Below, piece after piece: positions 5,533 through 50,697 of a stretch of 64,000 nt of DNA. The notes under the pieces are model-generated. The model searched no databases, was not told the origin of the DNA, and worked only from the letters and a program-made list of their open reading frames with translations. A program made the position numbers and the translations under genes. The DNA is taken from contig NIVC01001003.1 of the NCBI GenBank assembly GCA_002269645.1, forward strand, positions 248,001 through 312,000. The letters run 5' to 3'. This stretch comes from Macrostomum lignano (Eukaryota). How positions within the stretch are numbered: position 1 is the stretch's first letter; each line of letters opens with the position of its first letter.

Positions 5533-5615
<83 letters not shown>

Positions 5616-5664
5616 GGCAGACAGACAGACAGACAGACAGACAGACACACAGACAGACAGACAC

Positions 5665-5699
<35 letters not shown>

Positions 5700-5764
5700 C
5701 ACAGACAGACAGACACACAGACAGACAGACAGACAGACTGACTGACTGACAGACAGACAGACAC

Positions 5765-5795
<31 letters not shown>

Positions 5796-5856
5796 CACAG
5801 ACAGACAGACAGACAGACAGACTGACTGACTGACTGACTGACAGACAGACAGACAC

Positions 5857-5898
<42 letters not shown>

Positions 5899-5903
5899 TG
5901 ACA
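5531..5903. repeat. (GACA)n microsatellite with GACT/CACA variants
   Basis: Direct reading; produces the spurious QTDR / SVCL ORFs. Confidence 0.97.
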
Positions 5904-7574: not shown

Positions 7575-7600
7575 ATGGCTGATAACCAGCAGCAACAGCA

Positions 7601-7645
<45 letters not shown>

Positions 7646-8568
7646 ACAGGAGCAGAAAAAAGACACTAAAAAAGAGGAGAAGAGAAGCAAAACCGACAAG
7701 CAGGAAGACGAGCAGTCAACCAAGACGAACAAGCAGGCCGCCGCGAAGCCGTCCAGGCGCAACAAGCTGTACCGGACGCCGCCAACACCCGACTCGGACG
7801 CGCTGTTCGAACGGGAGCGAAGCTTCGTGCTGGACTCCCGCGTGATGGCCTCCATCTCTGAGGACTACTCGCGGGCCAACCCGAAAGTTGGCTCTGTGAT
7901 TCCACCATACAATGCGCAGAAGGACAACTACGTGAAGACCTACTTTGATTTCATCGGGGTGAAGAAAACTTTGAATAAGAATAAACAGGTGAGATGTCTG
8001 TGTGTGGCGGTACTGTCAGTGGTGTCTGTAAAGTACTGTCAGATACTCTGTAAGTTCTGTAAGCTGTCTGCATGTACGCGTACTATACTATATGCATGTA
8101 AGTACAGAGCCGATAATTCTATGTAGTTAGTACCTGTAAAGTACATCAAGAACTTCTGCTTTCGCCTCAGAACCCGCCGGGCACCTGCGTCGAAGGCCCA
8201 GCAATGGAGCGCTTCTTCACGTCTGGCCACGGCAAGCAGTACCTGACTCCGAGGAACGAGAGGCAGGGAAACGGTAAATCGAGAATCCAACTAATTAGAT
8301 TTTGCTTTATGCTACTAATAGTAGAGCAAAATAGATTTTAATGAATTCCACCATCTACATGTACAAAATACTTTCAGGCTACTCCAACGAGCAGCGAATG
8401 GGCCACGGCAAGCTGTGGCGCCACCCGAACCCCGAGATAGCGCAGTACGAGCGCCAGCCGCCGGAATTCCAGGGCTACAACGGTCGCTTCGGCTATCGGC
8501 GGACAACGCCGCGACTTCGACAGGAGCCGTCGCCGTTCGGCGTCAACACGGAGACGCCGATCTACTGA
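7575..8568 (+). CDS. SPMAP1: C17orf98/SPMAP1-like (DUF4542) sperm/ciliary microtubule-associated protein, 3 exons, about 235 aa, with N-terminal polyQ
   Basis: Exons 7575-7988, 8171-8273 and 8378-8568 join in frame (phases 0 and 1). Motifs ERSFVLD..S..Y....PK..S.IPPYNAQ.D and GYNGRFGYRRTTPRLRQ match my recollection of human C17orf98. Confidence 0.85.
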
Positions 8569-11590: not shown

Positions 11591-11770
11591 CATTCTAAAG
11601 GGACCCATTGTATTTTTAAGCAGCTTCGTACTAACCGCGGCCAGCTCTGCTTAACCCACTCAGCTACGTAGGATGTGGGTATTCCATAGGTAAAAGGCGG
11701 GAGTAAATCTGACTTTATTTTTCATAAACTAACGCCTCGTCATCTAATTAGCGATAGCTGCCGCAGCGCG

Positions 11771-13033
11771 TCACTCGACAAAGTTTCCGGGAAACAGACC
11801 GGACACCCCCGGCTCCATGTAGCCCTCCCACCAGCCATCGTCGTTTTTGCGCACCACGTAGATAACGGCGCCTTCATTAAAGGTCAATTCGTCCGACACG
11901 TCGGATATGTAATCGTAGATGGCCACCACCCGGCGCAGGTAGAACTCCGGCGCCCAGTCCGGGTCGCTCGGCTGATGCGGCACCAGCTGCTCGTCTGCCT
12001 GCGGCACCAGGCTGCTGATGTCCACGTTGGCGTTGCTGCTGCTATCGAATTGCGGCTCAGGCAGCTCCGGTTCGGGCGGCGGCGGCGGTGGCAGCGGCGT
12101 TTGCGTCCTCGGCGGCATCGCGGATGTCGGCAGGGGCGGCGCTGGCGGCGGGGCCGGCGGAGGAGGCGGCGGCTCCGCCACAGCGGGCGTCGCCGTAATC
12201 ATCTTAGACGACGCCGTTGACACGGTGGACAGTCGGCGAGGTGAACCAGTGGACTCCGGATGACTGCCAGCAACAGAAGCCGTGACAGCGGAGCCCCGCC
12301 GACTGCCGCTGGCACCGCCGGCGATGGTGCTGTAGTTGCCGGATGCGCCCCGGTCAACGGCGCCGCGGCCTGTTGAATAAGCCGCCGACACCTGCCTGCC
12401 AGCCTGCCGGCCGACTGTCATTGAGCCGTCCGGATTAACGACTCCAGACTGCTGCTCAACTACGCCGTGTCCAATGCTGTCCAGCACAGAGTAGTCTATG
12501 GGCTGGCGGCTGTAGCGGGGCGGAGCCGGCGGCGGTGCATTGGCCCCGGCGTGATAGACAATACCGGGCAGGCGGTGCTGCCCAGCAACTGGTAGCGGCT
12601 CGGCCGGCCTTGGCGTAGCCAGCTGGCCAATATGCCTGCGGGCCATGCGCTCTTTGTGCACAGAGACCCGAGCGCTTAGGGAGCCAATGTCGGTAGATAG
12701 ACGGCTGAGCTCGCCTGTCTCCAGATCTAGTAGGTCTTGAAAATCTTTAGCTAGCACATTGATCTGGTAAGCCACGCTAGCCAGGGACTGAGTGGCGTAT
12801 TTTTCTGTCTGCCTTACAGCCGCCTCGCGTTCCTTCCGATCTTTGGCGTTCAGATAATTGGTGCGGCAGAATTGGGCAACAGATTCCAGGCTCTGCGAGC
12901 TGCGGTCCAGCTCTTTGATGCCGTTGGCTATGTCAACGTCCAGGTGCTTTGATAGCTCGTCTAGGCGACTGCCGCCGTCTTGGGCAACTGCTGCTGACGA
13001 TGGAGCCTCTGGTGCCGCAGACATGGCCTTCAT
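11771..13033 (-). CDS. ABI: Abl interactor (Abi) family protein, single coding exon, 420 aa
   Basis: N-terminal Abi/WAVE-binding region (YATQSLASVAYQINVLA...RVSVHKERMARRHIGQL), the Y.R.PIDYSVLD.IGHGV motif, a proline-rich linker and a C-terminal SH3 (VVAIYDY..D..DELTFNEG..IYV..KNDDGWWEG...GLFPGNFVE). Start may be 13033 or 13024. Confidence 0.95.
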   Translation of the reverse strand: MKAMSAAPEAPSSAAVAQDGGSRLDELSKHLDVDIANGIKELDRSSQSLESVAQFCRTNYLNAKDRKEREAAVRQTEKYATQSLASVAYQINVLAKDFQDLLDLETGELSRLSTDIGSLSARVSVHKERMARRHIGQLATPRPAEPLPVAGQHRLPGIVYHAGANAPPPAPPRYSRQPIDYSVLDSIGHGVVEQQSGVVNPDGSMTVGRQAGRQVSAAYSTGRGAVDRGASGNYSTIAGGASGSRRGSAVTASVAGSHPESTGSPRRLSTVSTASSKMITATPAVAEPPPPPPAPPPAPPLPTSAMPPRTQTPLPPPPPPEPELPEPQFDSSSNANVDISSLVPQADEQLVPHQPSDPDWAPEFYLRRVVAIYDYISDVSDELTFNEGAVIYVVRKNDDGWWEGYMEPGVSGLFPGNFVE

Positions 13034-13103
13034 GAAGAGGGATATTGCTGCACAGTGAGTGGAAGGAGTGTTGAGTCATTTGTGGCACGGGTAGATGGGG
13101 ACA

Positions 13104-13830
13104 ACCTAGGGAAGGCAAAGAAGTGGCAGCCTAGGGAAGGCATAGGGCAGCCTAGGGAAGGCATAGAAGTGGCAGCCTAGGGAAGGCAAGAAGGGGAAGC
13201 CTAGGGAAGGCATAGAAGTGGCAGCCTAGGGAAGGCAAGAAGGGGAAGCCTAGGGAAGGCATAGAAGTGGCAGCCTAGGGAAGGCATAGAAGTGGCAGTC
13301 TAGGGAAGGCATATAAGTGACAGCCTAGGGAAGGCATAGAAGTGACAGCCTAGGGAAGGCATAGAAGTGACAGCCTAGGGAAGGCATAGAAGTGACAGCC
13401 TAGGGAAGGCATATAAGTGACAGCCTAGGGAAGGAATAGAAGTGACAGCCTAGGGAAGGCATAGAAGTGACAGCCTAGGAAAGGCATAGAAGTGACAGCC
13501 TAGGGAAGGCATAGAAGTGACAGCCTAGTGAAGGCATATAAGTGACAGCCTAGGGAAGGCATAGAAGTGACAGCCTAGGGAAGGAATAGAAGTGACAGCC
13601 TAGGGAAGGCATAGAAGTGACAGTCTAGGGAAGGCATAGAAGTGACAGCCTAGTGAAGGCATAGAAGTGACAGCCTAGGGAAGGAATAGAAGTGACAGCC
13701 TAGGGAAGGAATAGAAGTGACAGCCTAGGAAAGGCATAGAAGTGACAGCCTAGGGAAGGCATAGAAGTGACAGCCTAGGGAAGGCATAGAAGTGACAGCC
13801 TAGGAAAGGCATAGAAGTGACAGCCTAGAC
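13104..13830. repeat. 25-bp minisatellite between RPL7L1 and Abi
   Basis: GCCTAGGGAAGGCATAGAAGTGACA units. Confidence 0.95.
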
Positions 13831-14028
13831 AAGAGAGGACTGCTCTAACTTCTTACTAGAAACTATGCTTCAAACAGATAAAAATTAACAAAAAACTTCA
13901 TTACGCACAATTTACCAGCCAGTCAACCAACGGGGTTATAGACAATGTCTTACCCAACAAATTATGATGGTTTATTAAAATAGACAGACTTGGCGTCAAT
14001 GCAATTTAGTACACAGAGCAATATTAAA

Positions 14029-16287
14029 TCAGATCATCTCCCTAAGCAGGCCGTTAATGTACTCGTCTCGACTGCAACTAAGCGGCTGCCGCTTCCTAAT
14101 CAATTCCGGCTGACTCTCGTTGCCCCTAAATCTGGCCTCGGCCTTGGCCCAGCCACCTAGCGGTGCTTTCAGCCGCATCGGAGCCAGATAGCTGGCCGCC
14201 TGTACAAATGCCGGGCCGCAGGTGGCCAGTTCGTGCACCAGATCCTCAATGCACAATAGGCCGTATTTGCCCAGTGCGGCTTCGATAGCGGCATTATCCG
14301 TGATGGGAACTGGCCGCTGCTGATTGCCGGCCTCTGATTGGCTGCCGCTGGCCCGGCCGCGCTTGTACACAAGCTCGCGTACCGAGCGCATATCCGGAGC
14401 GCCCCAGGCTACAAACGGATCCAATAGGCGCAGCACAGATAGGCAGGCGGGCGTGGGCTTAGCAAACACGGCTGTGTTTAGCCGGGTCAGGCGGAACAGG
14501 CGCAGAGCTTTCACAATGCGCGGGTCCATGCCGGCCGAGCGGCCCCGACAGCGGACAATCAGGATTGGCCGCTCAGCTGACGACTGCGGCGCCTCCTCGG
14601 CTGCTGTCGGCAGCAGGGTAACCACAGGAGCCATCGGCTCTGCCGCTGCTGGCCTGCGCGCCAGTCGGTTCAACCTGTTGGTGTCGCGGTCCTGGAATGA
14701 GTTGACCAAACTGACTCGTAGTTGATGGAGAAAGCTCATTACATGACTTCCTGACATTCCCTCCTGACACATCTGCAAGTAGCATATCTGACATTCCCTC
14801 TGATACATCTGCGAGTAGCTTATCTGACATTCCCTCTGACACATCTGCAAGTAGCTTATCTGACATTCCCTCTGACCATCTGCGAGTAGCTTATCTGACA
14901 TTCCCTCTGACACATCTGCGAGTAGCTTATCTGACATTCCCTCTGACCATCTGCGAGTAGCTTATCTGACATTCCCTCTGACACATCTAAGAGTAGCTTA
15001 TCTGACATTCCCTCTGACACATCTGCGAGTAGCTTATCTGACATTCCCTCTGACACATCTGCAAGTAGCTTATCTGACATTCCCTCTGACCATCTGCGAG
15101 TAGCTTATCTGACATTCCCTCTGACACATCTAAGAGTAGCTTATCTGACATTCCCTCTGACACATCTAAGAGTAGCTTATCTGACATTCCCTCCTGGCAC
15201 ATCTAAGAGTAGCTTATCTGACATTCCCTCTGACACATCTAAGAGTAGCTTATCTGACATTCCCTCTGATACATCTGCGAGTAGCTTATCTGACATTCCC
15301 TCTGACACATCTAAGAGTAGCTTATCTGACATTCCCTCTGATACATCTGCGAGTAGCTTATCTGACATTCCCTCTGACACATCTAAGAGTAGCTTATCTG
15401 ACATTCCCTCTGACACATCTAAGAGTAGCTTATCTGACATTCCCTCTGACATATCTGCGAGTAGCTTATCTGACATCCCCTCTGACACATCTGCGAGTAG
15501 CTTATCTGACATTCCCTCTGACACATCTAAGAGTAGCTTATCTGACATCCCCTCTGACACATCTAAGAGTAGCTTATCTGACATTCCCTCTGACACATCT
15601 GCGAGTAGCTTATCTGACATTCCCTCTGATACATCTGCGAGTAGCTTATCTGACATTCCCTCTGACATATCTGCGAGTAGCTTATCTGACATTCCATCTG
15701 ACACACCCAGCTCATCTGACATTCCCACCGACATACCCAGCTCATCTGACATTCCCACTGACATACCCAGCTCATCTGACATTCCCACCGACATACCCAG
15801 CTCATCTGACATTGACACACCCAGCTCATCTGACATTCCCACCGACATACCCAGCTCATCTGACATTCCCACCGACATAACCAGCTCATCTGACATTCCA
15901 TCTGACATACCCAGCTATCTGACATTCCCACCGACATACCCAGCTCATCTGACATTCCCACCGACATACCCAGCTCATCTGACATTCCATCTGACACAAC
16001 TAGCTCATCTGACATTCCCACCGACATACCCAGCTCATCTGACATTCCATTTGACACACCCAACTCATCTGACATTCCCTTACCTTCAGCCTGCCCAGTT
16101 TCACCAGCCGTTCAACCCTAACAAAAGCTTCTTTGGTCTTCTTAACCCGCTGTCGCCTGGCCAGCCGCCTGTCCGCCGCCTGCTGTCGAGCCCGCGTCGA
16201 CCGGGCCTCCATGGCGGCCTTGCGGCGTTTTAACATCGTCTCCTGAACTGTGGGCAGAGCGCCCGCGCGTCTCTTGGTGCCGGCCAT
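14029..16287 (-). CDS. RPL7L1: uL30/RPL7-family protein, most like the nucleolar biogenesis factor RPL7L1/Rlp7; 2 exons, 288 aa
   Basis: Exon 16287-16084 (MAGTKRRAGALPTVQETMLKRRKA...FVRVERLV) joins exon 14691-14029 in phase 0. Motifs VRCRG..GM, FVAWGAPDMRSVRELVYKRG, ITDNAAIEAALGKYGLLCIEDLVHE and INGLLREM. The F.R.E.(F/L) segment resembles RPL7L1/Rlp7 more than cytoplasmic RPL7. Confidence 0.88.
14745..16080. repeat. Two-part minisatellite (36-bp, then 30-bp units) filling the RPL7L1 intron
   Basis: ACATCTGCGAGTAGCTTATCTGACATTCCCTCTGAC units to about 15690, then CCCAGCTCATCTGACATTCCCACCGACATA units; begins right after the GTAAG donor. Confidence 0.95.
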
Positions 16288-16984
16288 TGTCTGTTGTCTC
16301 TGTGTGACTATTGTTTGTATCAAGTCGAAATTTAGTCAGCTGATGACTGGCTGCAAACAAAAAACGAATAGCATTGATGCAGAAACGGGGGGGGGGGGGT
16401 TGAGGTACTTATTAAATTTGTTAAAATACACTGAATATACTGAATTAAATTTCCCGGCCGGGTACCCTGGCACAACGAGGCAATTCTGCCTACTATTCAA
16501 CTTATATATAATGTATATAATCCGATATATAATTTATCAGAAACTAATCACGGAAATTAAATATAATAAAAAATATAAAATAAATATAAGCACTATTTTT
16601 CTTAGAAATCAACCATTCAAAGTATGCGGGGGTACATAACAATTTAGTATTATTATTCAATATTAACACACATTTCATTTACAAAAAAAAATAATAATGA
16701 CCATAAGCAGAGTAGGCTTCACTTTTATTCATACATCTATGCAGCTGGATAGGTAGGTAAGCGATTCAGCAATGCTCTTCTACTTAACAATGTTGCGTTC
16801 AAGAATTGATCATATTGATTTTTATAAGTCTATACAAAGGTATATTCCTTAAATATAATTGGAGAAAGCATTGGAAAATAAATTGGTATTACAGCCGACA
16901 CCATCTACTAACTACTTAGCTAGGGGAACAGGGGAGAAAGTGGGTAGACAGAGGATTTAGAAATATACCTGTCTCAGTAGACAT

Positions 16985-17670
16985 GGGGATCTGGAGACTT
17001 GGTAGAAATTGGCATCTAGAGACTCGGCGGGTATCTAGAGACCCGGTAGGGATCTAGAGACTTGGTAGGAATCTAGAGACTCAGTAGGAATCTAGAGACT
17101 CAGTAGGGATCTAGAGACTCGGTAGCAGATCTAGAGACTAGATAGACAGAGGGATCTAGAGACTCAGTAGGGATCTAGAGACTCGGTAGCAGATCTAGAG
17201 ACTGGATAGACAGAGGGATCTAGAGACTCGGTAGGGATCTAGAGACTCGGTAGGGATCTAGAGACTCGGTAGAGATCTAGAGACTCGGTAGGAATCTAGA
17301 GACTCAGTAGGGATCTAGAGACTGTAGACATAGGGATCTAGATGGTAGATATAGGGATCTAGAGACTCGATAGACAGAGGGATTTAGAGACTCAGTAGGG
17401 ATCTAGAGACTGTAGACATAGGGATCTAGATGGTAGATATAGGGATCTAGAGACTCGATAGACAGAGGGATTTAGAGACTCAGTAGGGATCTAGAGACTG
17501 TAGACATAGGGATCTAGATAGTAGATATAGGGATCTAGAGACTCGATAGACAGAGGGATTTAGAGACTCGGTAGGGATCTAGATACTCAGTAACTATAGG
17601 GATCTAGATACTCAGTAACTATAGGGATCTAGATACTCAGTAACTATAGGGATCTAGAGACTCGGTAAGG
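16985..17670. repeat. About 19-bp minisatellite between YIPF6 and RPL7L1
   Basis: GGGATCTAGAGACTC(G/A)GTA core with longer variants. Confidence 0.9.
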
Positions 17671-17807
17671 GTTCTAGAGAACAAAAAGAAACGACACCCA
17701 AACCGTACAGAAGTATTAAAAGCCCATCCAAATAGATAGATCAGGTAAAAAGGCATCAGAATATAAATTCTTAAACAGTACAAGCCGCAAGAGCCGTAGC
17801 CCTGCAG

Positions 17808-20800
17808 TCAGCCAGAATGCGACAGAATCATCCAGCTGATCACAAAATAGAACAGGCACACCGGGTACACGGCCAGAGCTTTCCTATTGGGCGGTTGGCT
17901 GGATGCCAGAAACGCTGTAGAGGCAAACACGGACCAGGATAGGCCTAGCAGGACCAGACAGCAGCGGACAATGAACAGCACCAGACTGCGGCTTGCCAGC
18001 AGAATTATTCGGCAACCAATTAGCGATAGAAGCAGAGGCAGTACGCAGTAGCCAAGTACGCAGATAGCCTGCGGTTTAGAGATGCAGTTGCGTGTGAGAC
18101 ACTGACACTATTAGTGGTATCCTTCCCTGACACTATTAGTGGTATCCTTCCCTGACACTATTAGTAGTATCCTTCCCTGACACTATTAGTGGTATCCTTC
18201 CCTGACACTATTAGTGGTATCCTTCCCTGACACTATTAGTGGTATCCTTCCCTGACACTATTAGTGGCATCTACCTGACACTGTTAATGGAATCTACCTG
18301 ACACTATTAGTGGTATCCTTCCCTGACACTATTAGTGGCATCTACCTGACACTGTTAATGGAATCTACCTGACACTATTAGTGGTATCCTTCCCTGACAC
18401 TATTAGTGGTATCCTTCCCTGACACTATTAGTGGCATCTACCTGACACTGTTAATGGAATCTACCTGACACTATTAGTGGTATCCTTCCCTGACACTATT
18501 AGTGGCATCTACCTGACACTGTTAATGGAATCTACCTGACACTATTAGTGGTATCCTTCCCTGACACTATTAGTGGTATCCTTCCCTGACACTATTAGTG
18601 GTATCCTTCCCTGACACTATTAGTGGTATCCTTCCCTGACACTATTAGTGGTATCCTTCCCTGACACTATTAGTGGTATCCTTCCCTGACACTATTAGTG
18701 GTATCCTTCCCTGACACTATTAGTGGTATCCTTCCCTGACACTATTAGTGGCATCTACCTGACACTGTTAATGGAATCTACCTGACACTATTAGTGGTAT
18801 CCTTCCCTGACACTATTAGTGGCATCTACCTGACACTGTTAATGGAATCTACCTGACACTATTAGTGGTATCCTTCCCTGACACTATTAGCGGTATCCTT
18901 CCCTGACACTATTAGTGGCATCTACCTGACACTGTTAATGGAATCTACCTGACACTATTAGTGGTATCCTTCCCTGACACTATTAGTGGCATCTACCTGA
19001 CACTGTTAATGGAATCTACCTGACACTATTAGTGGTATCCTTCCCTGACACTATTAGTGGTATCCTTCCCTGACACTATTAGTGGTATCCTTCCCTGACA
19101 CTATTAGTGGTATCCTTCCCTGACACTATTAGTGGTTTCCTTCCCTGACACTATTAGTGGTTTCCTTCCCTGACACTATTAGTGGTTTCCTTCCCTGACA
19201 CTATTAGTGGTTTCTTTCCCTGACACTATTAGTGGCATCTACCTGACACTGTTAATGGAATCTACCTGACACTATTAGTGGTATCCTTCCCTGACACTAT
19301 TAGTGGCATCTACCTGACACTGTTAATGGAATCTACCTGACACTATTAGTGGTATCCTTCCCTGACACTATTAGTGGTATCCTTCCCTGACACTATTAGT
19401 GGTATCCTTCCCTGACACTATTAGTGGTATCCTTCCCTGACACTATTAGTGGTATCCTTCCCTGACACTATTAGTGGTATCCTTCCCTGACACTATTAGT
19501 GGTATCCTTCCCTGACACTATTAGTGGTATCCTTCCCTGACACTATTAGTGGTATCCTTCCCTGACACTATTAGTGGCATCTACCTGACACTGTTAATGG
19601 AATCTACCTGACACTATTAGTGGTATCCTTCCCTGACACTATTAGTGGCATCTACCTGACACTGTTAATGGAATCTACCTGACACTATTAGTGGTATCCT
19701 TCCCTGACACTATTAGTGGTATCCTTCCCTGACACTATTAGTGGCATCTACCTGACACTGTTAATGGAATCTACCTGACACTATTAGTGGTATCCTTCCC
19801 TGACACTATTAGTGGCATCTACCTGACACTGTTAATGGAATCTACCTGACACTATTAGTGGTATCCTTCCCTGACACTATTAGTGGTATCCTTCCCTGAC
19901 ACTATTAGTGGTATCCTTCCCTGACACTATTAGTGGTATCCTTCCCTGACACTATTAGTGGTTTCCTTCCCTGACACTATTAGTGGTTTCCTTCCCTGAC
20001 ACTATTAGTGGTTTCCTTCCCTGACACTATTAGTGGTTTCTTTCCCTGACACTATTAGTGGCATCTACCTGACACTGTTAATGGAATCTACCTGACACTA
20101 TTAATGACATCTACCTGACACTATTAATGGCATCTACCTGACACTATTAATGGAATCTACCTGACACTATTAGTGGCATCTACCTGACACTATTAATGGA
20201 ATCTAACTGACACTATTAGTGGCATCTACCTGACACTATTAATGGAATCTAACTGACACTGTTAGTGGCATCTACCTGACACTATTAGTGGTTTCCTTCC
20301 CTGACACTATTAGTGGTTTCCTTCCCTGACACTATTAGTGGTTTCTTTCCCTGACACTATTAATGGCATCTACCTGACACTGTTAATGGAATCTACCTGA
20401 CACTATTAATGACATCTACCTGACACTATTAATGGCATCTACCTGACACTATTAATGGAATCTACCTGACACTATTAATGGCATATAACTGACACTATTA
20501 ATGGTATCTACCTGACACTATTAATGGCATCTACCTGACACTGTTAATGGAATCTATCTGACACTATTAGTGGTATCCTTCCCTGACACTATTAGTGGCA
20601 TCTACCTGACACTGTTAATGGAATCTACCTGACACTATTAGTGGCATCTACCTGACACTATTAATGGAATCTAACTGACACTATTAGTGGCATCTACCTG
20701 ACACTGTTAATGGAATCTACCTGACACTATTAGTGACATCTACCTGACACTATTAATGGAATCTACCTGACACTATTAATGGAATCTACCTGACACTGTT

Positions 20801-23800
20801 AATGGCATCTACCTGACACTATTACTGGCATCTACCTGACACTATTAATGGCATATAACTGACACTATTAATGGTATCTACCTGACACTATTAATGGCAT
20901 CTACCTGACACTGTTAATGGAATCTATCTGACACTATTAGTGGTATCCTTCCCTGACACTATTAGTGGCATCTACCTGACACTGTTAATGGAATCTACCT
21001 GACACTATTAGTGGTATCCTTCCCTGACACTATTAGTGGTATCCTTCCCTGACACTATTAGTGGTTTCCTTCCCTGACACTATTAGTGGTTTCCTTCCCT
21101 GACACTATTAGTGGTTTCTTTCCCTGACACTATTAGTGGCATCTACCTGACACTGTTAATGACATCTACCTGACACTATTAATGGCATCTACCTGACACT
21201 ATTAATGGAATCTACCTGACACTATTAGTGGTATCCTTCCCTGACACTATTAGTGGTATCCTTCCCTGACACTATTAGTGGTATCCTTCCCTGACACTAT
21301 TAGTGGTTTCCTTCCCTGACACTATTAGTGGTTTCCTTCCCTGACACTATTAGTGGTTTCCTTCCCTGACACTATTAGTGGTTTCCTTCCCTGACACTAT
21401 TAGTGGTATCCTTCCCTGACACTATTAGTGGTTTCCTTCCCTGACACTATTAGTGGCATCTACCTGACACTATTAATGACATCTACCTGACACTATTAAT
21501 GGCATCTACCTGACACTATTAGTGGCATCTACCTGACACTATTAATGGCATCTACCTGACACTATTAGTGGCATCTACCTGACACTATTAGTGGCATCTA
21601 CCTGACACTATTAATGACATCTACCTGACACTGTTAATGGAATCTACCTGACACTATTAATGACATCTACCTGACACTATTAATGGCATCTACCTGACAC
21701 TATTAATGGAATCTACCTGACACTATTAGTGGCATCTACCTGACACTATTAATGGAATCTAACTGACACTGTTAATGGAATCTACCTGACACTATTAATG
21801 GCATCTACCTGACACTATTAATGGAATCTACCTGACACTGTTAATGGAATCTACCTGACACTGTTAATGGAATCTACCTGACACTATTAGTGGCATCTAC
21901 CTGACACTATTAATGGCATCTACCTGACACTATTAATGGAATCTAACTGACACTATTAGTGGCATCTACCTGACACTGTTAATGGAATCTACCTGACACT
22001 ATTAATGACATCTACCTGACACTATTAATGGCATCTACCTGACACTATTAATGGAATCTACCTGACACTATTAGTGGCATCTACCTGACACTATTAATGG
22101 AATCTACCTGACACTATTAATGACATCTACCTGACACTATTAATGGCATCTACCTGACACTATTAATGGAATCTACCTGACACTATTAGTGGCATCTACC
22201 TGACACTATTAATGGAATCTACCTGACACTATTAATGACATCTACCTGACACTATTAATGGCATCTACCTGACACTATTAATGGAATCTACCTGACACTG
22301 TTAATGGAATCTACCTGACACTGTTAATGGAATCTACCTGACACTATTAGTGGCATCTACCTGACACTATTAATGGCATCTACCTGACACTATTAATGGA
22401 ATCTAACTGACACTATTAGTGGCATCTACCTGACACTATTAATGGAATCTAACTGACACTATTAATGGCATCTACCTGACACTATTAATGGAATCTACCT
22501 GACACTATTAATGGCATCTACCTGACACTATTAGTGGCATCTACCTGACACTATTAATGGTATCTACCTGACACTATTAATGACATCTACCTGACACTAC
22601 CAACAATACCTACAAGCATATAAAAAGAGTACCAGAGCAAGCTCACCTGAAAGAAAGAAATATCACCGCCAAGAAGCTTGGCATTAAGCGTGACAGCGCA
22701 GGCTCCAACCCAGAACACGATGAACACCTGAGCAAACTGCGGACCTCCGTCGTTTGATCCGGCACTGGAGTGGCCTTGCAACAGGCTGCAAGTGTGTTTG
22801 GCGAACCACAGTTACTAAAGTACTATGATAGTGAAATTTTGTTTGCAGAGGAAAAAACAATAGGATTAAAACTTACGTTGCCAAAAAGGTGCAAAGGATC
22901 AACGGGCCCCAGAGGTCCCCTGGAAATAAAATGGAACATTGATTAATGCAAAATTTTGCATTTTCATTATCATAGATGCAAATTTCTCGTGTCTCACATC
23001 TCGCATTTCATCTCCCGGACGTTATATTAACCCTCAACTGTAGTCTCACATGTTTACCTGGCACCTCAACTAACACCTCCCGTATCTACCTGACACCTGA
23101 ACTGACATCTCCCGTATCTACCTGACACCTGAACTGACATCTCCCGTACCTACCTGACACCTCAACTAACACCTCCCGTATCTACCTGACACCTGAACTG
23201 ACATCTCCCGTATCTACCTGACACCTCAACTAACACCTCCCGTATCTACCTGACACCTGAACTGACATCTCCCGTATCTACCTGACACCTCAACTGACAT
23301 CTCCCGTATCTACCTGGCACCTCAACTAACACCTCCCGTATCTACCTGACACCTGAACTTACATCTCCCGTATCTACCTGACACCTGAACTGACACCTCC
23401 CGTATCTACCTGACACCTGAACTGACATCTCCCGTATCTACCTGGCACCTGAACTGACATCTCCGGTATCTACCTGACACCTGAACTGACATCTCCCGTA
23501 TCTACTTGACACCTGAACTGACATCTCCCGTATCTACCTGACACCTGAACTGACATCTCCCGTGTCTACCTGACACCTGAACTGACATCTCCCGAGTCTA
23601 CCTGATACCTCAACTACAGTCTCACATGTTTACCTGACACCTCGGCTGACATCTACCGTGTCTACCAGACACATGAACTGACATCTCCCGTATCTACCTG
23701 ACACATAAACTGACATCTCCCGAGTCTACCTGATACCTCAACTACAGTCTCACATGTTTACCTGACACCTGAACTGACATCTCCCGTATCTACCTGACAC

Positions 23801-24645
23801 CTGAACTGACATCTCCCGTGTCTACCAGACACCTGAACTGACATCTCCCGAGTCTACCTGATACCTCAACTACAGTCTCACATGTTTACCTGACACCTCG
23901 GCTGACATCTACCGTGTCTACCAGACACATGAACTGACATCTCCCGTATCTACCTGACACATAAACTGACATCTCCCGAGTCTACCTGATACCTCAACTA
24001 CAGTCTCACATGTTTACCTGACACCTGAACTGACATCTCCCGTATCTACCTGACACCTCAACTGACATCTCCCGCGTCTGACACCTCAAATGCAGTCTCA
24101 CATTTTTACCTGACACCTGAACTGACATCTCCCGTGTCTACCTCACTCCTCAACTAAGATCTCCCGAGTCTACCTGGCACCTGAACTGATATCTCCCGTG
24201 TCTACCAGACACATGAACTGACATCTCCCGAGTCTACCTGGCACCTGAACTGATATCTCCCGTGTCTACCAGACACATGAACTGACATCTCCCGTGTCTA
24301 CCTGACACCTCAACTGACATCTCCTGTGTCTCTTAAGTACTTAGCGTTCTACATGAGATATTTACACTAGCCTCTAATTAATATTGTCACTATAAACCAC
24401 AGCCTACAGCAACAAAAAGAATAAGAATCGAAAAAAAGCTCACAATCTCTCAGCAGAGATTTGCTCGATCTTGGAATGAACACATGATAGAACTTAACAC
24501 CAACTGCTTTCACATCTCTCAGTATAGTATCCTTAACAGGCTCGTCCAGGGTTGATGGATACAAGTTAGAGCCATTCAGTGGCACATTTGGCACATTGCT
24601 GGGCCCAGAGTTGGACATATCACCTTCTAATGGTGCCGCTGATGC
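17808..24645 (-). CDS. YIPF6: YIPF6 (Yip1-domain Golgi membrane protein), at least 4 coding exons; 5' end uncertain
   Basis: Exons 24645-24444, 22919-22877, 22785-22647 and 18068-17808 join in frame (phases 1, 2, 0): STLDEPVKDTILRDVKAVGVKF.HV..P...SLLRD|WDLWGPLILC|..GGPQFAQVF..W.GA..VTLNAKLLGG.ISFFQ|.ICVLGYC.LPL..QPPNRKALAVYPV.LFYFVISWMI. First in-exon ATG is at 24618; an upstream exon is possible. Confidence 0.95.
18102..22599. repeat. 4.5-kb variant-unit minisatellite (23-25 bp) filling a YIPF6 intron
   Basis: Units CTGACACTATTAGTGGTATCCTTCC, CTGACACTATTAGTGGCATCTAC and CTGACACTGTTAATGGAATCTAC intermixed. Confidence 0.97.
23030..24330. repeat. 32-bp minisatellite in a YIPF6 intron
   Basis: ACCTGACACCTGAACTGACATCTCCCGTATCT units. 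Confidence 0.93.
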
Positions 24646-25625: not shown

Positions 25626-27499
25626 CATATATTATGTTACAGGTAGGTGTTTGTCATATTGTATGTATATTTCTAAGAAGTATGGCCCCTTTTAAAATGT
25701 TTGTTTTGCATATAATATATGTAATATAAAATAGTATAAGGTTTAGGTTTAGTTGATGATAGCTGAATATCTGAATGTATGTATAGAGAGCTTGTTCCTG
25801 TGTAAATGCAATATATGTTCATATCTAATACAAAATAGGTTTATGCTTATCATCTCTATGTTCAGTTGATAAATTTTAATGACAAATGGATAAATATTAT
25901 TTTATTATAAATATACAATTGTATACAATAGTTTATTTTTGAAAATTTTAAGTCTTATTGAGTTGTTTATTAATTTGCATTTTGCTGAATAGCTAATTAT
26001 GATATTATATTAGAATGTTAGCATATTCAGACATATTAGGCCTAAGACTCCTAAGTTACAAAGTATAAATGGCAGAATGCTAATCTTTCTAATATATCAA
26101 TATATACTAATAGTATATGAGGGCATCTTCATATTATTAGGGCATCTTTTGTCCTCATTTTAAATTCATTATTAATAGAAAATGTACAAAACTTACACTT
26201 GGTGAGTCATGAAACTCCATGACAAATTGTTTATTGTCTGTAGCCATCTTTACCTTTTTGACAGACAAGATAGGCCTACCTTTAAATGTTAGACCTACTA
26301 GTAAATGTCAAATATGTGTGCACTACTACTATGTCTTCTTTTCTTATGCCTTAAGCTTAACACTTATCTTCAGGGCAATGCTATTATTTAGCGAGTAGGT
26401 ACTAGACAAAATTTTAACTGTATATAATATGAATGCGACAATAATCAGCTGGCTGCTAGCTGTTACGATTTACAAACACCAAGTAAGGCCCTACCAACAA
26501 TATATACTTGCCTAGTTCTTCACAATCTCAAATATCATCTACTATGTCTTCTGAATTAAAATATACCAGAAGTCCAGAATAGAATTCTACCTGACAATTA
26601 TGATGAGCAGCGGCGGCGGGGGCCGATTCAACGAACTCGTAATATAAAGTTTGAATTTGAACCAGATTTTTTAGAAAAATATAGTATTTTAAACAAATAG
26701 CTACTAGCGAACTTTTTAAAATGAACAAATATGTTTTGTTGAATTTTTGATGTACAATTTTTCTCTTTACTTTGCATACTTTTTCTACGTGGTTTTAACA
26801 TTTGGGTTTCAACGGCGCGACATTATATGATTCGATTATTCAATTATGCCAATGGCATAATAAATGGAATAATACTCCTTTAGAAAAAGTCAGAACTTGT
26901 TAATGTCTAAAATACAACGCTCTATAAAAACAGCAGAGCAATGAGATAGTTAGAGCAATATGTGCAACCCTAAAAATATGCCCCTAAAAAGTGTCAGGAA
27001 TTAGTGTCAGCGCATCACCGAGCAATTAGCAAGAGGACGAAGATCAATCCCAGTAGCAGTGCCCAGTGCCTCGGCGTCACAAAGCAGACCAGTCCAACGT
27101 GTCCGCTCCCCCTTCCGTCTGAGCGGATCTACCGTCTGAGGGTTGTCTGGCGAAATATAGGACTAATGTGCTCATAATTGCTCATTTCTATTCATGTATA
27201 TCATGACAATTCATACTGTACTAGAAAGTGCAACTAATTAGTCTATGACTAAAGCCTCTGCTTAAAAACTAAAGGTCATATTCTACCCCTAATGAAACTT
27301 CTTGATCTGAGAAAATGGTTCAACAGCGAGATGTCGCGTTATCGTCATCTTTATCTTAAAAACTAAGTCGTTATCGATTGCTACAAAGCTGGAAAGTCTG
27401 CGATAGAGTGTCTTCGCCACCTGCAGGCAATCTACCAGGATGATGCCTTGTCTAGAAGCTAGGTCTATTACATCTATGACCAACTGCGCTCTGGCCACG

Positions 27500-28323
27500 A
27501 CGGTTCGGTTCTGATGGACGTGGAAAGAACAAGGACCCGACTGTCAGGACCCCAGCAAAAATTGAGATTGTTGCTCGTCTGATTGAGGACAGGCGCCTCA
27601 CTGTTAGGGAGCTCTCAGATAAATCTGGGATTCCCAAGACAACTATTCATGAGATTCTTGTCCATGACCTGCAGTCAAGCATGTGTCTGCCAGGTGGGTG
27701 CCTTACCTGCTCACGGAAGAAAACCGCAGGGAGTGCACACACTGTGCTCAGGACTTCTTTTGCATGAGCCGGGCTTTCAGCAGCAAATAATAACTGCTGA
27801 TGAAACATGGCTTTACTACGTGACTCCGGAAACCAAGAACCAATCTAAGCAGTGGGTGCCAATGGTTGCCAATGCCCCGACAAAGGCCCGGGTGTCCCGC
27901 AGTGCCGTGACTCACAGGGCCTTGCCTACACGTAGAGCAGGGCCAGACAGTCAACGCATACTTGACACTCTGAGGGACCACATTCGACGCAAGCGGCCAG
28001 AATGGATGGCAAGAACCAGGTTCACTGTTCTGCATGACAATGCCCGTCCACACACGTGTCAGCCCACACCAGGGAGTTTCTTACCAGGAGAGGCATTCCG
28101 GTGGTGCCGCATCCAACCTACTCACCTGATTTGGCCCCTGGCTGCGGACTTCTGGCTATTTCCGCATGTCAAAAACTGCATTGCCGGTTGCCGGTTCGAC
28201 ACCTTGCTGGAGCTTTTGACACCAACCCCATGGCTGCTTCCCAGTGCACTGAGGCCTTCAACAAGTGGCTGTTAGGGATGGCAGCGGTGCATTGAGAAGG
28301 ATGGAGATTATGTTGAAAAATGA
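27500..28323 (+). mobile_element. Decayed mariner (DD34D-type) transposase
   Basis: Pieces across several frames: LIEDRRLTVRELSDKSGIPKTTIHEIL, IITADETWLYYVTPETKNQSKQWV, LHDNARPH, PHPTYSPDLAP, DFWLFPH, and GDYVEK*. Multiple frameshifts; TIRs not identified. Confidence 0.88.
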
Positions 28324-42901: not shown

Positions 42902-47484
<4,583 letters not shown>

Positions 47485-47629: not shown

Positions 47630-50600
47630 TGCAGACAAGGATGAGTGAGGCAGAAGCGGACACAAAGCGAGTGGACACAAACGGGCAAAGAGTGAGGCAG
47701 AAGCGGACACAAGCGGTCAAGGAGTGAGGCAGAAGCGGACACAAACGGGCAAGGAGTGAGGCAGAAGCGGACACAAACGGTCAAGGAGTGAGGCACAAGC
47801 GGACACAAACGGGCAAGGAAGAGTGAGGCAGAAGCGGACACAAACGGGCAAGGACGAGTGAGGCAGAAGCGGACACAAACGGTCAAGGAGTGAGGCAGAA
47901 GCGGACACAAACGGGCAAGGAAGAGTGAGGCAGAAGCGGACACAAGCGGTCAAGGAGTGAGGCAGAAGCGGACACAAACGGGCAAGGAGTGAGGCAGAAG
48001 CGGACACAAACGGTCAAGGAGTGAGGCACAAGCGGACACAAACGGGCAAGGAGTGAGGCACAAGCGGACACAAACGGGCAAGGAGTGAGGCAGAAGCGGA
48101 CACAAACGGTCAAGGAGTGAGGCAGAAGCGGACACAAACGGGCAAGGAGTGAGGCACAAGCGGACACAAACGGGCAAGGAGTGAGGCACAAGCGGACACA
48201 AACGGGCAAGGAGTGAGGCAGAAGCGGACACAAACGGTCAAGGAGTGAGGCACAAGCGGACACAAACGGGCAAGGAAGAGTGAGGCAGAAGCGGACACAA
48301 ACGGGCAAGGACGAGTGAGGCAGAAGCGGACACAAACGGTCAAGGAGTGAGGCAGAATCGGACACAAACGGGCAAGGAAGAGTGAGGCAGAAGCGGACAC
48401 AAACGGGCAAGGAGTGAGGCACAAGCGGACACAAACGGGCAAGGAGTGAGGCACAAGCGGACACAAACGGGCAAGGAGTGAGGCAGAAGCGGACACAAAC
48501 GGTCAAGGAGTGAGGCACAAGCGGACACAAACGGGCAAGGAGTGAGGCAGAAGCGGACACAAACGGTCAAGGAGTGAGGCACAAGCGGACACAAACGGGC
48601 AAGGAAGAGTGAGGCAGAAGCGGACACAAACGGGCAAGGACGAGTGAGGCAGAAGCGGACACAAACGGTCAAGGAGTGAGGCAGAAGCGGACACAAACGG
48701 GCAAGGAAGAGTGAGGCAGAAGCGGACACAAGCGGTCAAGGAGTGAGGCAGAAGCGGACACAAACGGGCAAGGAGTGAGGCAGAAGCGGACACAAACGGT
48801 CAAGGAGTGAGGCACAAGCGGACACAAACGGGCAAGTAGTGAGGCACAAGCGGACACAAACGGGCAAGGAGTGAGGCAGAAGCGGACACAAACGGTCAAG
48901 GAGTGAGGCAGAAGCGGACACAAACGGGCAAGGAGTGAGGCACAAGCGGACACAAACGGGCAAGGAGTGAGGCACAAGCGGACACAAACGGGCAAGGAGT
49001 GAGGCAGAAGCGGACACAAACGGTCAAGGAGTGAGGCACAAGCGGACACAAACGGGCAAGGAAGAGTGAGGCAGAAGCGGACACAAACGGGCAAGGACGA
49101 GTGAGGCAGAAGCGGACACAAACGGTCAAGGAGTGAGGCAGAATCGGACACAAACGGGCAAGGAAGAGTGAGGCAGAAGCGGACACAAACGGGCAAGGAG
49201 TGAGGCACAAGCGGACACAAACGGGCAAGGAGTGAGGCACAAGCGGACACAAACGGGCAAGGAGTGAGGCAGAAGCGGACACAAACGGTCAAGGAGTGAG
49301 GCACAAGCGGACACAAACGGGCAAGGAAGAGTGAGGCAGAAGCGGACACAAACGGTCAAGGAGTGAGGCACAAGCGGACACAAACGGGCAAGGAAGAGTG
49401 AGGCAGAAGCGGACACAAACGGGCAAGGAAAAGTGAGGCAGAAGCGGACACAAACGGGCAAGGAAGAGTGAGGCAGAAGCGGACACAAACGGGCAAGGAA
49501 GAGTGAGGCAGAAGCGGACACAAACGGTCAAGGAGTGAGGCAGAAGCGGACACAAACGGTCAAGGAGTGAGGCAGAAGCGGACACAAACGGTCAAGGAGT
49601 GAGGCAGAAGCGGACACAAACGGTCAAGGAGTGAGGCAGAAGCGGACACAAACGGGCAAGGAGTGAGGCAGAAGCGGACACAAACGGTCAAGGAGTGAGG
49701 CACAAGCGGACACAAACGGGCAAGGAGTGAGGCACAAGCGGACACAAACGGGCAAGGAGTGAGGCAGAAGCGGACACAAACGGTCAAGGAGTGAGGCAGA
49801 AGCGGACACAAACGGGCAAGGAGTGAGGCACAAGCGGACACAAACGGGCAAGGAGTGAGGCACAAGCGGACACAAACGGGCAAGGAGTGAGGCAGAAGCG
49901 GACACAAACGGTCAAGGAGTGAGGCACAAGCGGACACAAACGGGCAAGGAAGAGTGAGGCAGAAGCGGACACAAACGGGCAAGGACGAGTGAGGCAGAAG
50001 CGGACACAAACGGTCAAGGAGTGAGGCAGAATCGGACACAAACGGGCAAGGAAGAGTGAGGCAGAAGCGGACACAAACGGGCAAGGAGTGAGGCACAAGC
50101 GGACACAAACGGGCAAGGAGTGAGGCACAAGCGGACACAAACGGGCAAGGAGTGAGGCAGAAGCGGACACAAACGGTCAAGGAGTGAGGCACAAGCGGAC
50201 ACAAACGGGCAAGGAGTGAGGCACAAGCGGACACAAACGGGCAAGGAGTGAGGCACAAGCGGACACAAACGGGCAAGGAAGAGTGAGGCAGAAGCGGACA
50301 CAAACGGGCAAGGAAAAGTGAGGCAGAAGCGGACACAAACGGGCAAGGAAGAGTGAGGCAGAAGCGGACACAAACGGGCAAGGAAGAGTGAGGCAGAAGC
50401 GGACACAAACGGTCAAGGAGTGAGGCAGAAGCGGACACAAACGGTCAAGGAGTGAGGCAGAAGCGGACACAAACGGTCAAGGAGTGAGGCAGAAGCGGAC
50501 ACAAACGGTCAAGGAGTGAGGCAGAAGCGGACACAAACGGTCAAGGAGTGAGGCAGAAGCGGACACAAACGGTCAAGGAGTGAGGCAGAAGCGGACACAA

Positions 50601-50697
50601 ACTGGCAAGGAGTGAGGCAGAAGCGGACACAAACTGGCAAGGAGTGAGGCAGAAGCGGACACAAACGGGCAAGGAGTGACGCAGAAGCGGACACAAC
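47630..50697. repeat. 3-kb satellite, 32-35-bp units with higher-order periodicity
   Basis: GAGTGAGGCA(G/C)AAGCGGACACAAACGG(G/T)CAAG units; all the SASASLL..RLCP ORFs derive from it. Confidence 0.97.

What the first reader, a model, noticed from the sequence alone, without database searches (positions are those of the whole stretch)
11771..24645. Operon-like run YIPF6 > RPL7L1 > Abi with minisatellite spacers and orphan splice acceptors
Three unrelated housekeeping genes lie head-to-tail on the minus strand, with about 1.5 kb and 1.0 kb between stop and next start. Each gap is mostly one minisatellite. Both downstream genes have a strong acceptor just before the ATG: TTCGTTTTTTGTTTGCAG ending at 16351 (63 nt upstream) and CTCCTTCCACTCACTGTGCAG ending at 13048 (14 nt upstream). 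Little unique DNA is left for a promoter, especially for Abi. This fits polycistronic transcription resolved by spliced-leader trans-splicing, known in flatworms, with the repeat acting as the intercistronic outron.
Basis: partly seen in the sequence, partly recalled or inferred. Interest (0 to 1): 0.7.

Follow-up and report, generated by a model that had tools for sequence, protein, structure and literature searches.

The report
Known flatworm trans-spliced operon locus
This is part of the published Macrostomum lignano genome where three unrelated genes sit in a row and the downstream ones very probably receive a spliced leader; repeat-padded operons of this kind are already described and annotated for this flatworm, so the finding is correct in outline but ordinary.

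Summary
Window 23030-1771 (minus strand) is base-for-base identical to Macrostomum lignano assembly Mlig_3_7, contig NIVC01001003.1; the rest was not compared. The three genes are real and head-to-tail on the minus strand: a Yip1-family gene, a divergent uL30/RPL7-like gene, and Abi.

Corrections:
- The Yip1 gene starts at 26247, not 24645, because it has an extra upstream exon.
- Minisatellites fill 46% of gap 1 and 73% of gap 2. They fill 84-98% of this locus's large introns and 37% of the window, so they are not specific to spacers.
- The deposited Abi model starts at 13030, not 13047.

The deposited names put the Yip1 and uL30-like genes in one transcriptional unit at two loci. Repeat-adjusted distances (753 and 269 nt) meet the published operon threshold of under 1 kb. 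Published work already reports that 30% of M. lignano genes are trans-spliced, 15% lie in operons, and repeats inflate intercistronic distances. Verdict: already known, low interest.

The parts
26197..26247 (-).
   Evidence: The deposited 231-aa product starts here. The protein rebuilt from the window exons is an exact database match, PAA64719/PAA73618.
24444..24645 (-). Yip1 gene exon 2. Position 24645 is a cis-acceptor (CACACAG|), not the gene start.
23055..24331 (-). 32-nt minisatellite (40 copies) inside a Yip1 gene intron
   Evidence: TRF. The sister copies have 48 copies.
22877..22919 (-). Yip1 gene exon 3 (WDLWGPLILC motif)
22647..22785 (-). Yip1 gene exon 4
18102..22599 (-). 23-nt minisatellite (189 copies) filling 98% of the last Yip1 intron
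   Evidence: Copy number is 176-207 in the sister copies.
17808..18068 (-). Yip1 gene last exon, stop codon at 17810-17808
17014..17680 (-). 19/25-nt minisatellite in gap 1, probably inside the Yip1 3' UTR
   Evidence: TRF. There is no minus-strand AATAAA between the stop codon and this array.
16724..16729 (-). First minus-strand AATAAA after the Yip1 stop codon (1079 nt downstream), a candidate poly(A) signal
   Evidence: function inferred
16352..17013 (-). Unique AT-rich (33% GC) DNA between the minisatellite and the acceptor. It is either an intercistronic region or the site of an internal promoter.
   Evidence: It is 95.9% identical to the sister copy. It contains no GT[AG]AG donor.
16351..16368 (-). 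TTCGTTTTTTGTTTGCAG, the predicted spliced-leader acceptor of the uL30-like gene
   Evidence: It fits the published [T/C]TNCAG motif. It is conserved in all three copies. The 5'-partial model P0122 begins 2 nt after this AG.
16084..16350 (-). uL30/RPL7L1-like gene exon 1: 63-nt 5' UTR, then coding sequence from the ATG at 16287
   Evidence: The product is an exact match to PAA64718/PAA73617.
14751..16079 (-). 30-nt and 36-nt minisatellites filling 95% of the single uL30-like gene intron
14029..14691 (-). uL30/RPL7L1-like gene exon 2, stop codon at 14031-14029
13971..13976 (-). AATAAA 53 nt after the uL30-like stop codon, a candidate poly(A) signal
13856..13953 (-). Two donor-like GTAAGA sites (at 13953 and 13856) just upstream of the gap-2 minisatellite
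   Evidence: These are the basis of the cis-splicing rival.
13100..13828 (-). 25-nt minisatellite (29 copies), 73% of gap 2
   Evidence: The sister copies have 15.6 copies.
13048..13068 (-). It does not fit [T/C]TNCAG.
   Evidence: A spliced leader joined here would open a 6-codon upstream ORF.
13031..13033 (-). ATG in the window and in NIVC01003280.1, but CAG (CTTCCAG| acceptor) in NIVC01001724.1. The deposited Abi model begins at the next base, 13030.
11771..13033 (-). Abi coding sequence, single exon, 420 aa. It is deposited as a 419-aa 5'-partial product starting at K.
11714..11719 (-). AATAAA 52 nt after the Abi stop codon. The next gene (7575-8568) is on the opposite strand, so the run ends here.

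Best explanation
This is an ordinary, already annotated spliced-leader (SL) trans-spliced gene cluster of Macrostomum lignano.

Proposed mechanism:
1. Transcription starts upstream of the Yip1 gene's first exon (above 26247) and runs through Yip1 into the uL30/RPL7L1-like gene, and probably on into Abi.
2. Each upstream mRNA is released by cleavage and polyadenylation. Candidate AATAAA signals lie at 16729-16724, 13976-13971 and 11719-11714.
3. Each downstream mRNA gets its cap from the 35-nt SL (CGGTCTCTTACTGCGAAGACTCAATTTATTGCATG). For the uL30-like gene the SL joins at TTTGCAG| (16351/16350).
4. For Abi the SL joins at the site whose first exon base is 13030. That site reads CTTCCAG| in the sister copy, and there the leader's terminal AUG is in frame and gives MKAMS...
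5. The minisatellites are neutral, copy-number-variable filler. The same kind of filler occupies the introns.

Shown here: gene identities, coordinates, identity to the deposited assembly, the shared transcriptional-unit names, the 5'-partial model boundaries, and the repeat-adjusted distances.

Inferred: actual SL joining, read-through transcription, and poly(A) site use.
For: - Window 23030-1771 is identical to GCA_002269645.1 contig NIVC01001003.1.
- The same three-gene run occurs on two further contigs of that assembly.
- The Yip1 and uL30-like proteins are unrelated in sequence yet share a name prefix at two loci: Mlig002884g1/g2 and Mlig003448g1/g2. [quoted passage not shown] Genes were then cut from those units at SL-read peaks and poly(A) sites (PMC5730564).
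- 5'-partial coding sequences begin 0-2 nt after [TC]TNCAG acceptors: TTTGCAG|cc-AGT for the uL30-like copy P0122, CTTCCAG|AAG for Abi on NIVC01001724.1, and GTTGCAG| for the Abi paralogues. The open frame upstream of P0122's start shows the model really ends at the acceptor.
- Gap 1 has no GT[AG]AG donor in 1457 nt, against a background of 0.23 per 100 nt. That is the published condition for an acceptor to be trans-spliced (PMC8629364).
- Repeat-adjusted distances from stop codon to acceptor are 753 and 269 nt. Both are under the 1-kb operon threshold of PMC8629364, which also reports that repeats inflate operon spacers.
- Array copy numbers differ between assembly copies in gaps and introns alike, for example 29.4 versus 15.6 units in gap 2.
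Against: - I could not reach any SL-bearing read, long read or transcription-start data. All RNA-level support comes second-hand from the deposited annotation.
- Abi has a different transcriptional-unit prefix (Mlig023343), so no assembled precursor links it to the uL30-like gene. The authors say units tend to break at repeats, but that is an excuse, not evidence.
- In the window copy the annotated Abi 5' end is preceded by ATG, not AG.
- Gap 1 keeps about 660 nt of unique AT-rich DNA that could hold an internal promoter.
- By the published operational criteria only about 40% of trans-spliced M. lignano genes are in operons, so trans-splicing alone does not imply co-transcription.
- Gap 2 has two donor-like GTAAGA sites upstream of its minisatellite.
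Confidence: 0.75

Rival explanations
1. The genes have separate promoters and only trans-splicing is shared. The uL30-like gene, and perhaps Abi, is transcribed from its own promoter in the intergenic DNA. The acceptor removes a short outron from a monocistronic pre-mRNA. The shared transcriptional unit reflects a long Yip1 3' UTR overlapping that outron in RNA-seq coverage.
For: Gap 1 has about 660 nt of unique, 33% GC DNA directly upstream of the acceptor. The first AATAAA for the Yip1 gene is only about 375 nt upstream of the acceptor, so transcripts could abut or overlap. About 60% of trans-spliced M. lignano genes are not assigned to operons (PMC8629364).
Against: Both loci were assembled as a single transcriptional unit and then cut. 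Repeat-adjusted distances are below the published operon threshold. For Abi only 269 nt of non-repeat DNA is available, of which about 200 nt is the upstream gene's 3' end.
Confidence: 0.18
2. Gap 2 is removed by cis-splicing. Its minisatellite is an ordinary intron, running from a donor at 13953 or 13856 to the acceptor at 13048 (or 13031 in the CAG copies). Abi would then receive a cis-spliced 5' exon that overlaps the uL30-like gene's 3' end, or a bicistronic mature mRNA would form.
For: Two GTAAGA donor-like sites lie just upstream of the array, and acceptors lie just downstream. Every other large minisatellite in this locus sits in an intron. Flatworm acceptors are often shared between cis- and trans-splicing (PMC12582326).
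Against: The deposited Abi model is 5'-partial and begins exactly at the acceptor in two copies, with no upstream exon. The donors lie at or after the expected cleavage site of the AATAAA at 13976-13971. GT[AG]AG is common, at 0.23 per 100 nt.
Confidence: 0.07
3. The minisatellites are functional intercistronic elements, for example spacers that slow the polymerase or recruit splicing factors through their pyrimidine-rich ...CTAG motifs. On this view they are not neutral filler.
For: Both gap arrays carry a pyrimidine-rich stretch ending in TAG in every unit. The arrays occupy the same positions in all three copies.
Against: Copy number differs up to two-fold between copies with no change in the flanks. 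Unrelated arrays fill the introns even more densely, and 37% of the window is minisatellite. The published analysis treats such repeats as neutral accumulation.
Confidence: 0.04

Closest known systems
Macrostomum lignano spliced-leader operons (Wudarski et al. 2017, PMC5730564; Ustyantsev & Berezikov 2021, PMC8629364)
   Same: Same organism and same assembly. It has a single 35-nt leader ending in AUG, a [T/C]TNCAG acceptor, same-strand unrelated conserved genes, spacers inflated by tandem repeats, and repeat-adjusted spacing under 1 kb. The Yip1 and uL30-like genes are already named as g1 and g2 of one transcriptional unit.
   Different: Nothing essential differs. Abi is not joined to the unit in the deposited names, and in the window copy its annotated 5' end lacks the AG.
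Caenorhabditis elegans SL2 operons
   Same: A polycistronic precursor is resolved by 3' end formation of the upstream gene plus trans-splicing of the downstream gene. The genes are functionally unrelated housekeeping genes.
   Different: C. elegans uses a dedicated SL2 for downstream genes and spacers of about 100 nt. M. lignano has one leader. Here the spacers are about 0.36-0.9 kb, taking the poly(A) sites inferred from AATAAA, and are much longer because of repeats.
Parasitic flatworm polycistrons (Schistosoma, Echinococcus; PMC12582326)
   Same: The leader ends in AUG, which can serve as the initiator codon. There is no leader specialisation, and candidate operons are defined by short same-strand spacing.
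   Different: Those surveys use spacing of 300 bp or less. This locus passes only after repeats are subtracted. I found no orthologous locus with which to test conservation.

Membership tests
M. lignano SL operon (operational definition of PMC8629364) | Adjacent genes on the same strand with no opposite-strand gene between them | tested here: met
   Gene models and the deposited gene table agree. The next gene after Abi is on the opposite strand.
M. lignano SL operon (operational definition of PMC8629364) | Intergenic distance under 1000 bp after subtracting repeats | tested here: met
   The distances are 753 nt (gap 1) and 269 nt (gap 2). They are measured from the stop codon, which is conservative.
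M. lignano SL operon (operational definition of PMC8629364) | The downstream gene is SL trans-spliced, meaning SL-bearing reads map at its 5' end | tested here: inconclusive
   No reads were available. Indirect support: 5'-partial deposited models begin 0-2 nt after the AG of TTTGCAG (uL30-like copy P0122) and CTTCCAG (Abi on NIVC01001724.1). The pipeline sets such 5' ends from SL-read peaks.
M. lignano SL operon (operational definition of PMC8629364) | [T/C]TNCAG motif at the trans-splice acceptor | tested here: inconclusive
Met at 16351 (TTTGCAG). The window's gap 2 has no such motif. The annotated site reads TTCATG in the window and TTCCAG in the sister copy.
Polycistronic transcription unit (Wudarski et al. 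2017 sense) | One assembled precursor transcript contains both genes | tested here: inconclusive
   For Yip1 plus uL30-like, the shared prefixes Mlig002884g1/g2 and Mlig003448g1/g2 support it. For uL30-like plus Abi it is not supported, because Abi's prefix is Mlig023343. The precursor sequences themselves were not seen.
C. elegans-type SL2 operon | A specialised second leader for downstream genes and a spacer of about 100 nt | tested here: not met
   M. lignano has a single leader. The spacers here are hundreds of nt even after subtracting repeats.
Yip1 domain family | Pfam PF04893 above the gathering score | tested here: met
   60 bits against a 28.6 cutoff. The YIPF6-versus-other-YIPF assignment was not resolved.
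For the subfamily, closer similarity to RPL7L1/Rlp7 than to RPL7. | tested here: inconclusive
   The family is clear: phmmer gives 1.9e-39 to uL30 chains. Human RPL7L1 scores 8e-31 and yeast Rlp7 5e-25, lower than RPL7. Identity to uL30 proteins is only 36-40%, which suggests a divergent paralogue. The Pfam domains fall below their cutoffs.
Abl-interactor (Abi) | Abi_HHR domain plus a C-terminal SH3 domain | tested here: met
   Abi_HHR at 54 bits and SH3_1 at 46 bits. Hundreds of Abi1/2 homologues were found.

The most novel reading that the evidence does not exclude
The CAG/ATG difference at 13033-13031 may be real rather than a polishing error. If so, near-identical copies of one gene alternate between two ways of making the same N-terminus (MKAMS...). 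In one copy the start codon is donated by the spliced leader's terminal AUG at a CTTCCAG| acceptor. In the other the start codon is genome-encoded at the very same position and trans-splicing shifts 17 nt upstream. That would be a snapshot of how leader-donated initiator codons are gained or lost.
Probability: 0.3. Interest if true: 0.35.

Novelty: already known. Interest (0 to 1): 0.12.

Why it matters
It matters little beyond confirming that a reader working from raw sequence can recognise a flatworm operon. The phenomenon, its genome-wide statistics and the role of repeats in stretching spacers are all published, and this locus is already in the deposited annotation. The one point worth a specialist's minute is the ATG/CAG discrepancy at the Abi trans-splice site. 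If it is an artefact, it warns that polishing a genome with RNA-seq can write leader bases into trans-splice sites. If it is real, it is a small case study in leader-donated start codons.

Tried and rejected
- An exact look-up of the window's 420-aa Abi found nothing. The deposited product lacks the first M.
I worked around this with cluster look-ups.
- The 35-nt leader does not occur in the window, so no SL RNA gene is present. Its 3' 13-mer is not enriched either: 21 matches against 23 expected.
- Supplements of PMC5816591 and PMC5730564 contain none of the three Mlig identifiers, so no per-gene trans-splicing flags could be read.
- No RNA-derived contigs of M. lignano for these genes turned up in the protein collection, so the SL-exon junctions could not be seen directly.
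- The homologue search with the uL30-like protein returned no flatworm orthologues, so conservation of the gene order in other flatworms could not be tested.
- I considered and rejected reading the 'gN' suffix as position in the operon. The uL30-like gene is g2 and g3 at different loci, so the suffix simply numbers genes within a prefix cluster.
- I considered that the minisatellites mark intercistronic regions specifically. I rejected this because the introns are denser in them.


Full report
**What the sequence is.** The Abi reading frame at 13033-11771 is 98% identical to a GenBank protein of Macrostomum lignano. Minus-strand window 23030-1771 is identical, base for base, to 21,260 nt of assembly Mlig_3_7 (GCA_002269645.1), contig NIVC01001003.1, positions 249771-271030. 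The window is therefore a piece of a published, annotated flatworm genome. The same three-gene run occurs on two more contigs of that assembly. On NIVC01001724.1 the unique DNA is 96-99.8% identical to the window. NIVC01003280.1 is a poorly polished near-duplicate of NIVC01001724.1, differing by 4 mismatches and 24 indels over 5.7 kb. The assembly is known to hold duplicated chromosome copies (PMC8629364).

**Gene models.**
- Yip1-family gene: five coding exons at 26247-26197, 24645-24444, 22919-22877, 22785-22647 and 18068-17808. The product is 231 aa and matches PAA64719/PAA73618 exactly. It carries a Pfam Yip1 domain.
- uL30/RPL7-like gene: two exons at 16287-16084 and 14691-14029. The product is 288 aa and matches PAA64718/PAA73617 exactly. 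Membership of the uL30 family is clear. The RPL7L1 subfamily call is plausible but not proven.
- Abi: a single exon at 13033-11771 with Abi_HHR and SH3 domains.

**Checking the observation.**
- Minisatellites with period 10 or more cover 46% of gap 1 and 73% of gap 2.
- They also cover 84%, 98% and 95% of three introns in these genes, and 37% of the whole window. They are a property of this genome, not of spacers.
- Their copy numbers differ between the assembly copies in gaps and introns alike. The gap-2 array, for example, has 29.4 units in the window and 15.6 in the sister copies. That fits neutral filler.
- Gap 1 retains about 660 nt of unique, 33% GC DNA. Gap 2 retains only 269 nt of non-repeat DNA.

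**What is known for this animal.**
- M. lignano has one 35-nt leader, CGGTCTCTTACTGCGAAGACTCAATTTATTGCATG.
- About 30% of its genes are trans-spliced and about 15% are assigned to operons.
- The acceptor motif is [T/C]TNCAG.
[quoted passage not shown] They therefore defined operons by a repeat-adjusted spacing under 1 kb with a trans-spliced downstream gene (PMC8629364).
- The genome paper assembled 'transcriptional units' that often were precursor mRNAs. It cut them into genes at peaks of leader-containing reads and at poly(A) sites, and named clustered units with a common prefix (PMC5730564).

**Locus-specific evidence.**
1. The Yip1 and uL30-like proteins have no sequence similarity, yet they are named Mlig002884g1/g2 at one locus and Mlig003448g1/g2 at the other. 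A shared prefix for unrelated proteins is only explained if both were cut from one transcriptional unit.
2. In the frameshifted third copy, the deposited 5'-partial uL30-like product (P0122, SHQLTKF...) starts 2 nt after TTTGTTTGCAG|.
3. Abi is deposited as 5'-partial, starting at K (window 13030), in two copies. In NIVC01001724.1 the preceding bases are CTCTTCCAG|, a good motif match. The leader's AUG would be in frame there and give MKAMS.... Abi paralogues show the same pattern, with GTTGCAG|.
4. Gap 1 has no GT[AG]AG donor in 1457 nt, so the acceptor at 16351 has no cis partner there.
5. Repeat-adjusted spacing is 753 and 269 nt, both under the published threshold.
6. Minus-strand AATAAA signals lie 53 and 52 nt after the uL30-like and Abi stop codons. 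The first one after the Yip1 stop codon is 1079 nt away, beyond the minisatellite. The gap-1 array therefore probably sits in a 3' UTR, and the true spacer is about 0.36 kb of unique DNA.

**What remains open.**
- I saw no RNA reads. All transcript-level support is read off the deposited annotation.
- Abi has its own unit prefix (Mlig023343), so its co-transcription with the uL30-like gene rests on spacing alone.
- Gap 2 has two donor-like GTAAGA sites (13953 and 13856) upstream of its array, so a cis-spliced route cannot be excluded.
- In the window copy the annotated Abi 5' end is preceded by ATG rather than CAG.

**The ATG/CAG site.** Two of the four mismatches between the near-identical contigs NIVC01003280.1 and NIVC01001724.1 are this CA-to-AT change. 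The assembly was polished with Pilon using RNA-seq as well as genomic reads, and the leader ends in ...GCATG. Leader-bearing reads could therefore have written ATG over CAG. Against that idea, the base at -5 was not changed to the leader's G, and NIVC01003280.1 otherwise looks unpolished. I leave it unresolved. Genomic read pile-ups would settle it.

**Verdict.** It describes a phenomenon, and a locus, that are already published and annotated. Novelty: already known. Interest is low.

Noticed in passing
window 13031-13033 (minus strand); L005 12613-12615; L003 12665-12667: At the base before the deposited Abi 5' end, the window and NIVC01003280.1 read ATG while NIVC01001724.1 reads CAG, a trans-splice acceptor. 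The spliced leader ends in AUG and would be in frame. The assembly was polished with RNA-seq, so this may be an imprint of leader bases, or it may be a real swap between a leader-donated and a genome-encoded start codon.
   Followed up: partly
window 27583-28275 (+): An open frame resembles a mariner-type transposase remnant (…ETWLYYVTPETKNQSKQW…HDNARPH…). It lies about 1.3 kb upstream of the Yip1 gene's first exon. The call rests on the motifs alone; no family search was run.
   Followed up: no
window 7575-8568 (+) and at or below 4554 (+): The deposited annotation places a 235-aa gene with no Pfam hit and a PIF1-family helicase gene (648 aa) on the opposite strand, convergent with Abi. In the sister contig the first is annotated as a 145-aa SPMAP1-like product.
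   Followed up: no
window 13100-13828, 17014-17680, 18102-22599, 23055-24331 (minus strand): The minisatellite units carry splice-site-like motifs. The gap arrays have a pyrimidine-rich stretch ending in CTAG in every unit. The intron arrays repeat GTCAG|GTAGAT. Whether these are used or suppressed by the splicing machinery is unknown.
   Followed up: no
window 16387-16399 (minus strand): A run of 13 C lies 36 nt upstream of the uL30-like acceptor. Its length differs between the assembly copies, so it is either a homopolymer error or real variation.
   Followed up: no
L006 5985-6000, L007 2161-2176, L008 5985-6000: The Abi paralogues (Mlig028412 and Mlig001963) have tandem acceptors, GTTGCAG|CAG|. 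Their deposited 5'-partial products start one codon apart (STAGMS versus TAGMS), which suggests NAGNAG-type alternative trans-splice sites. These paralogues sit in a different gene neighbourhood, next to a mitochondrial uS9 gene.
   Followed up: partly
whole window: Tandem arrays with period 10 or more cover 37% of the 64 kb, including a 3-kb 32-mer array at 47673-50696 and (ACAG)n/(AGAC)n tracts at 5533-5903 and 45942-46484. AATAAA is twice as frequent as in shuffled sequence (77 versus 37).
   Followed up: no
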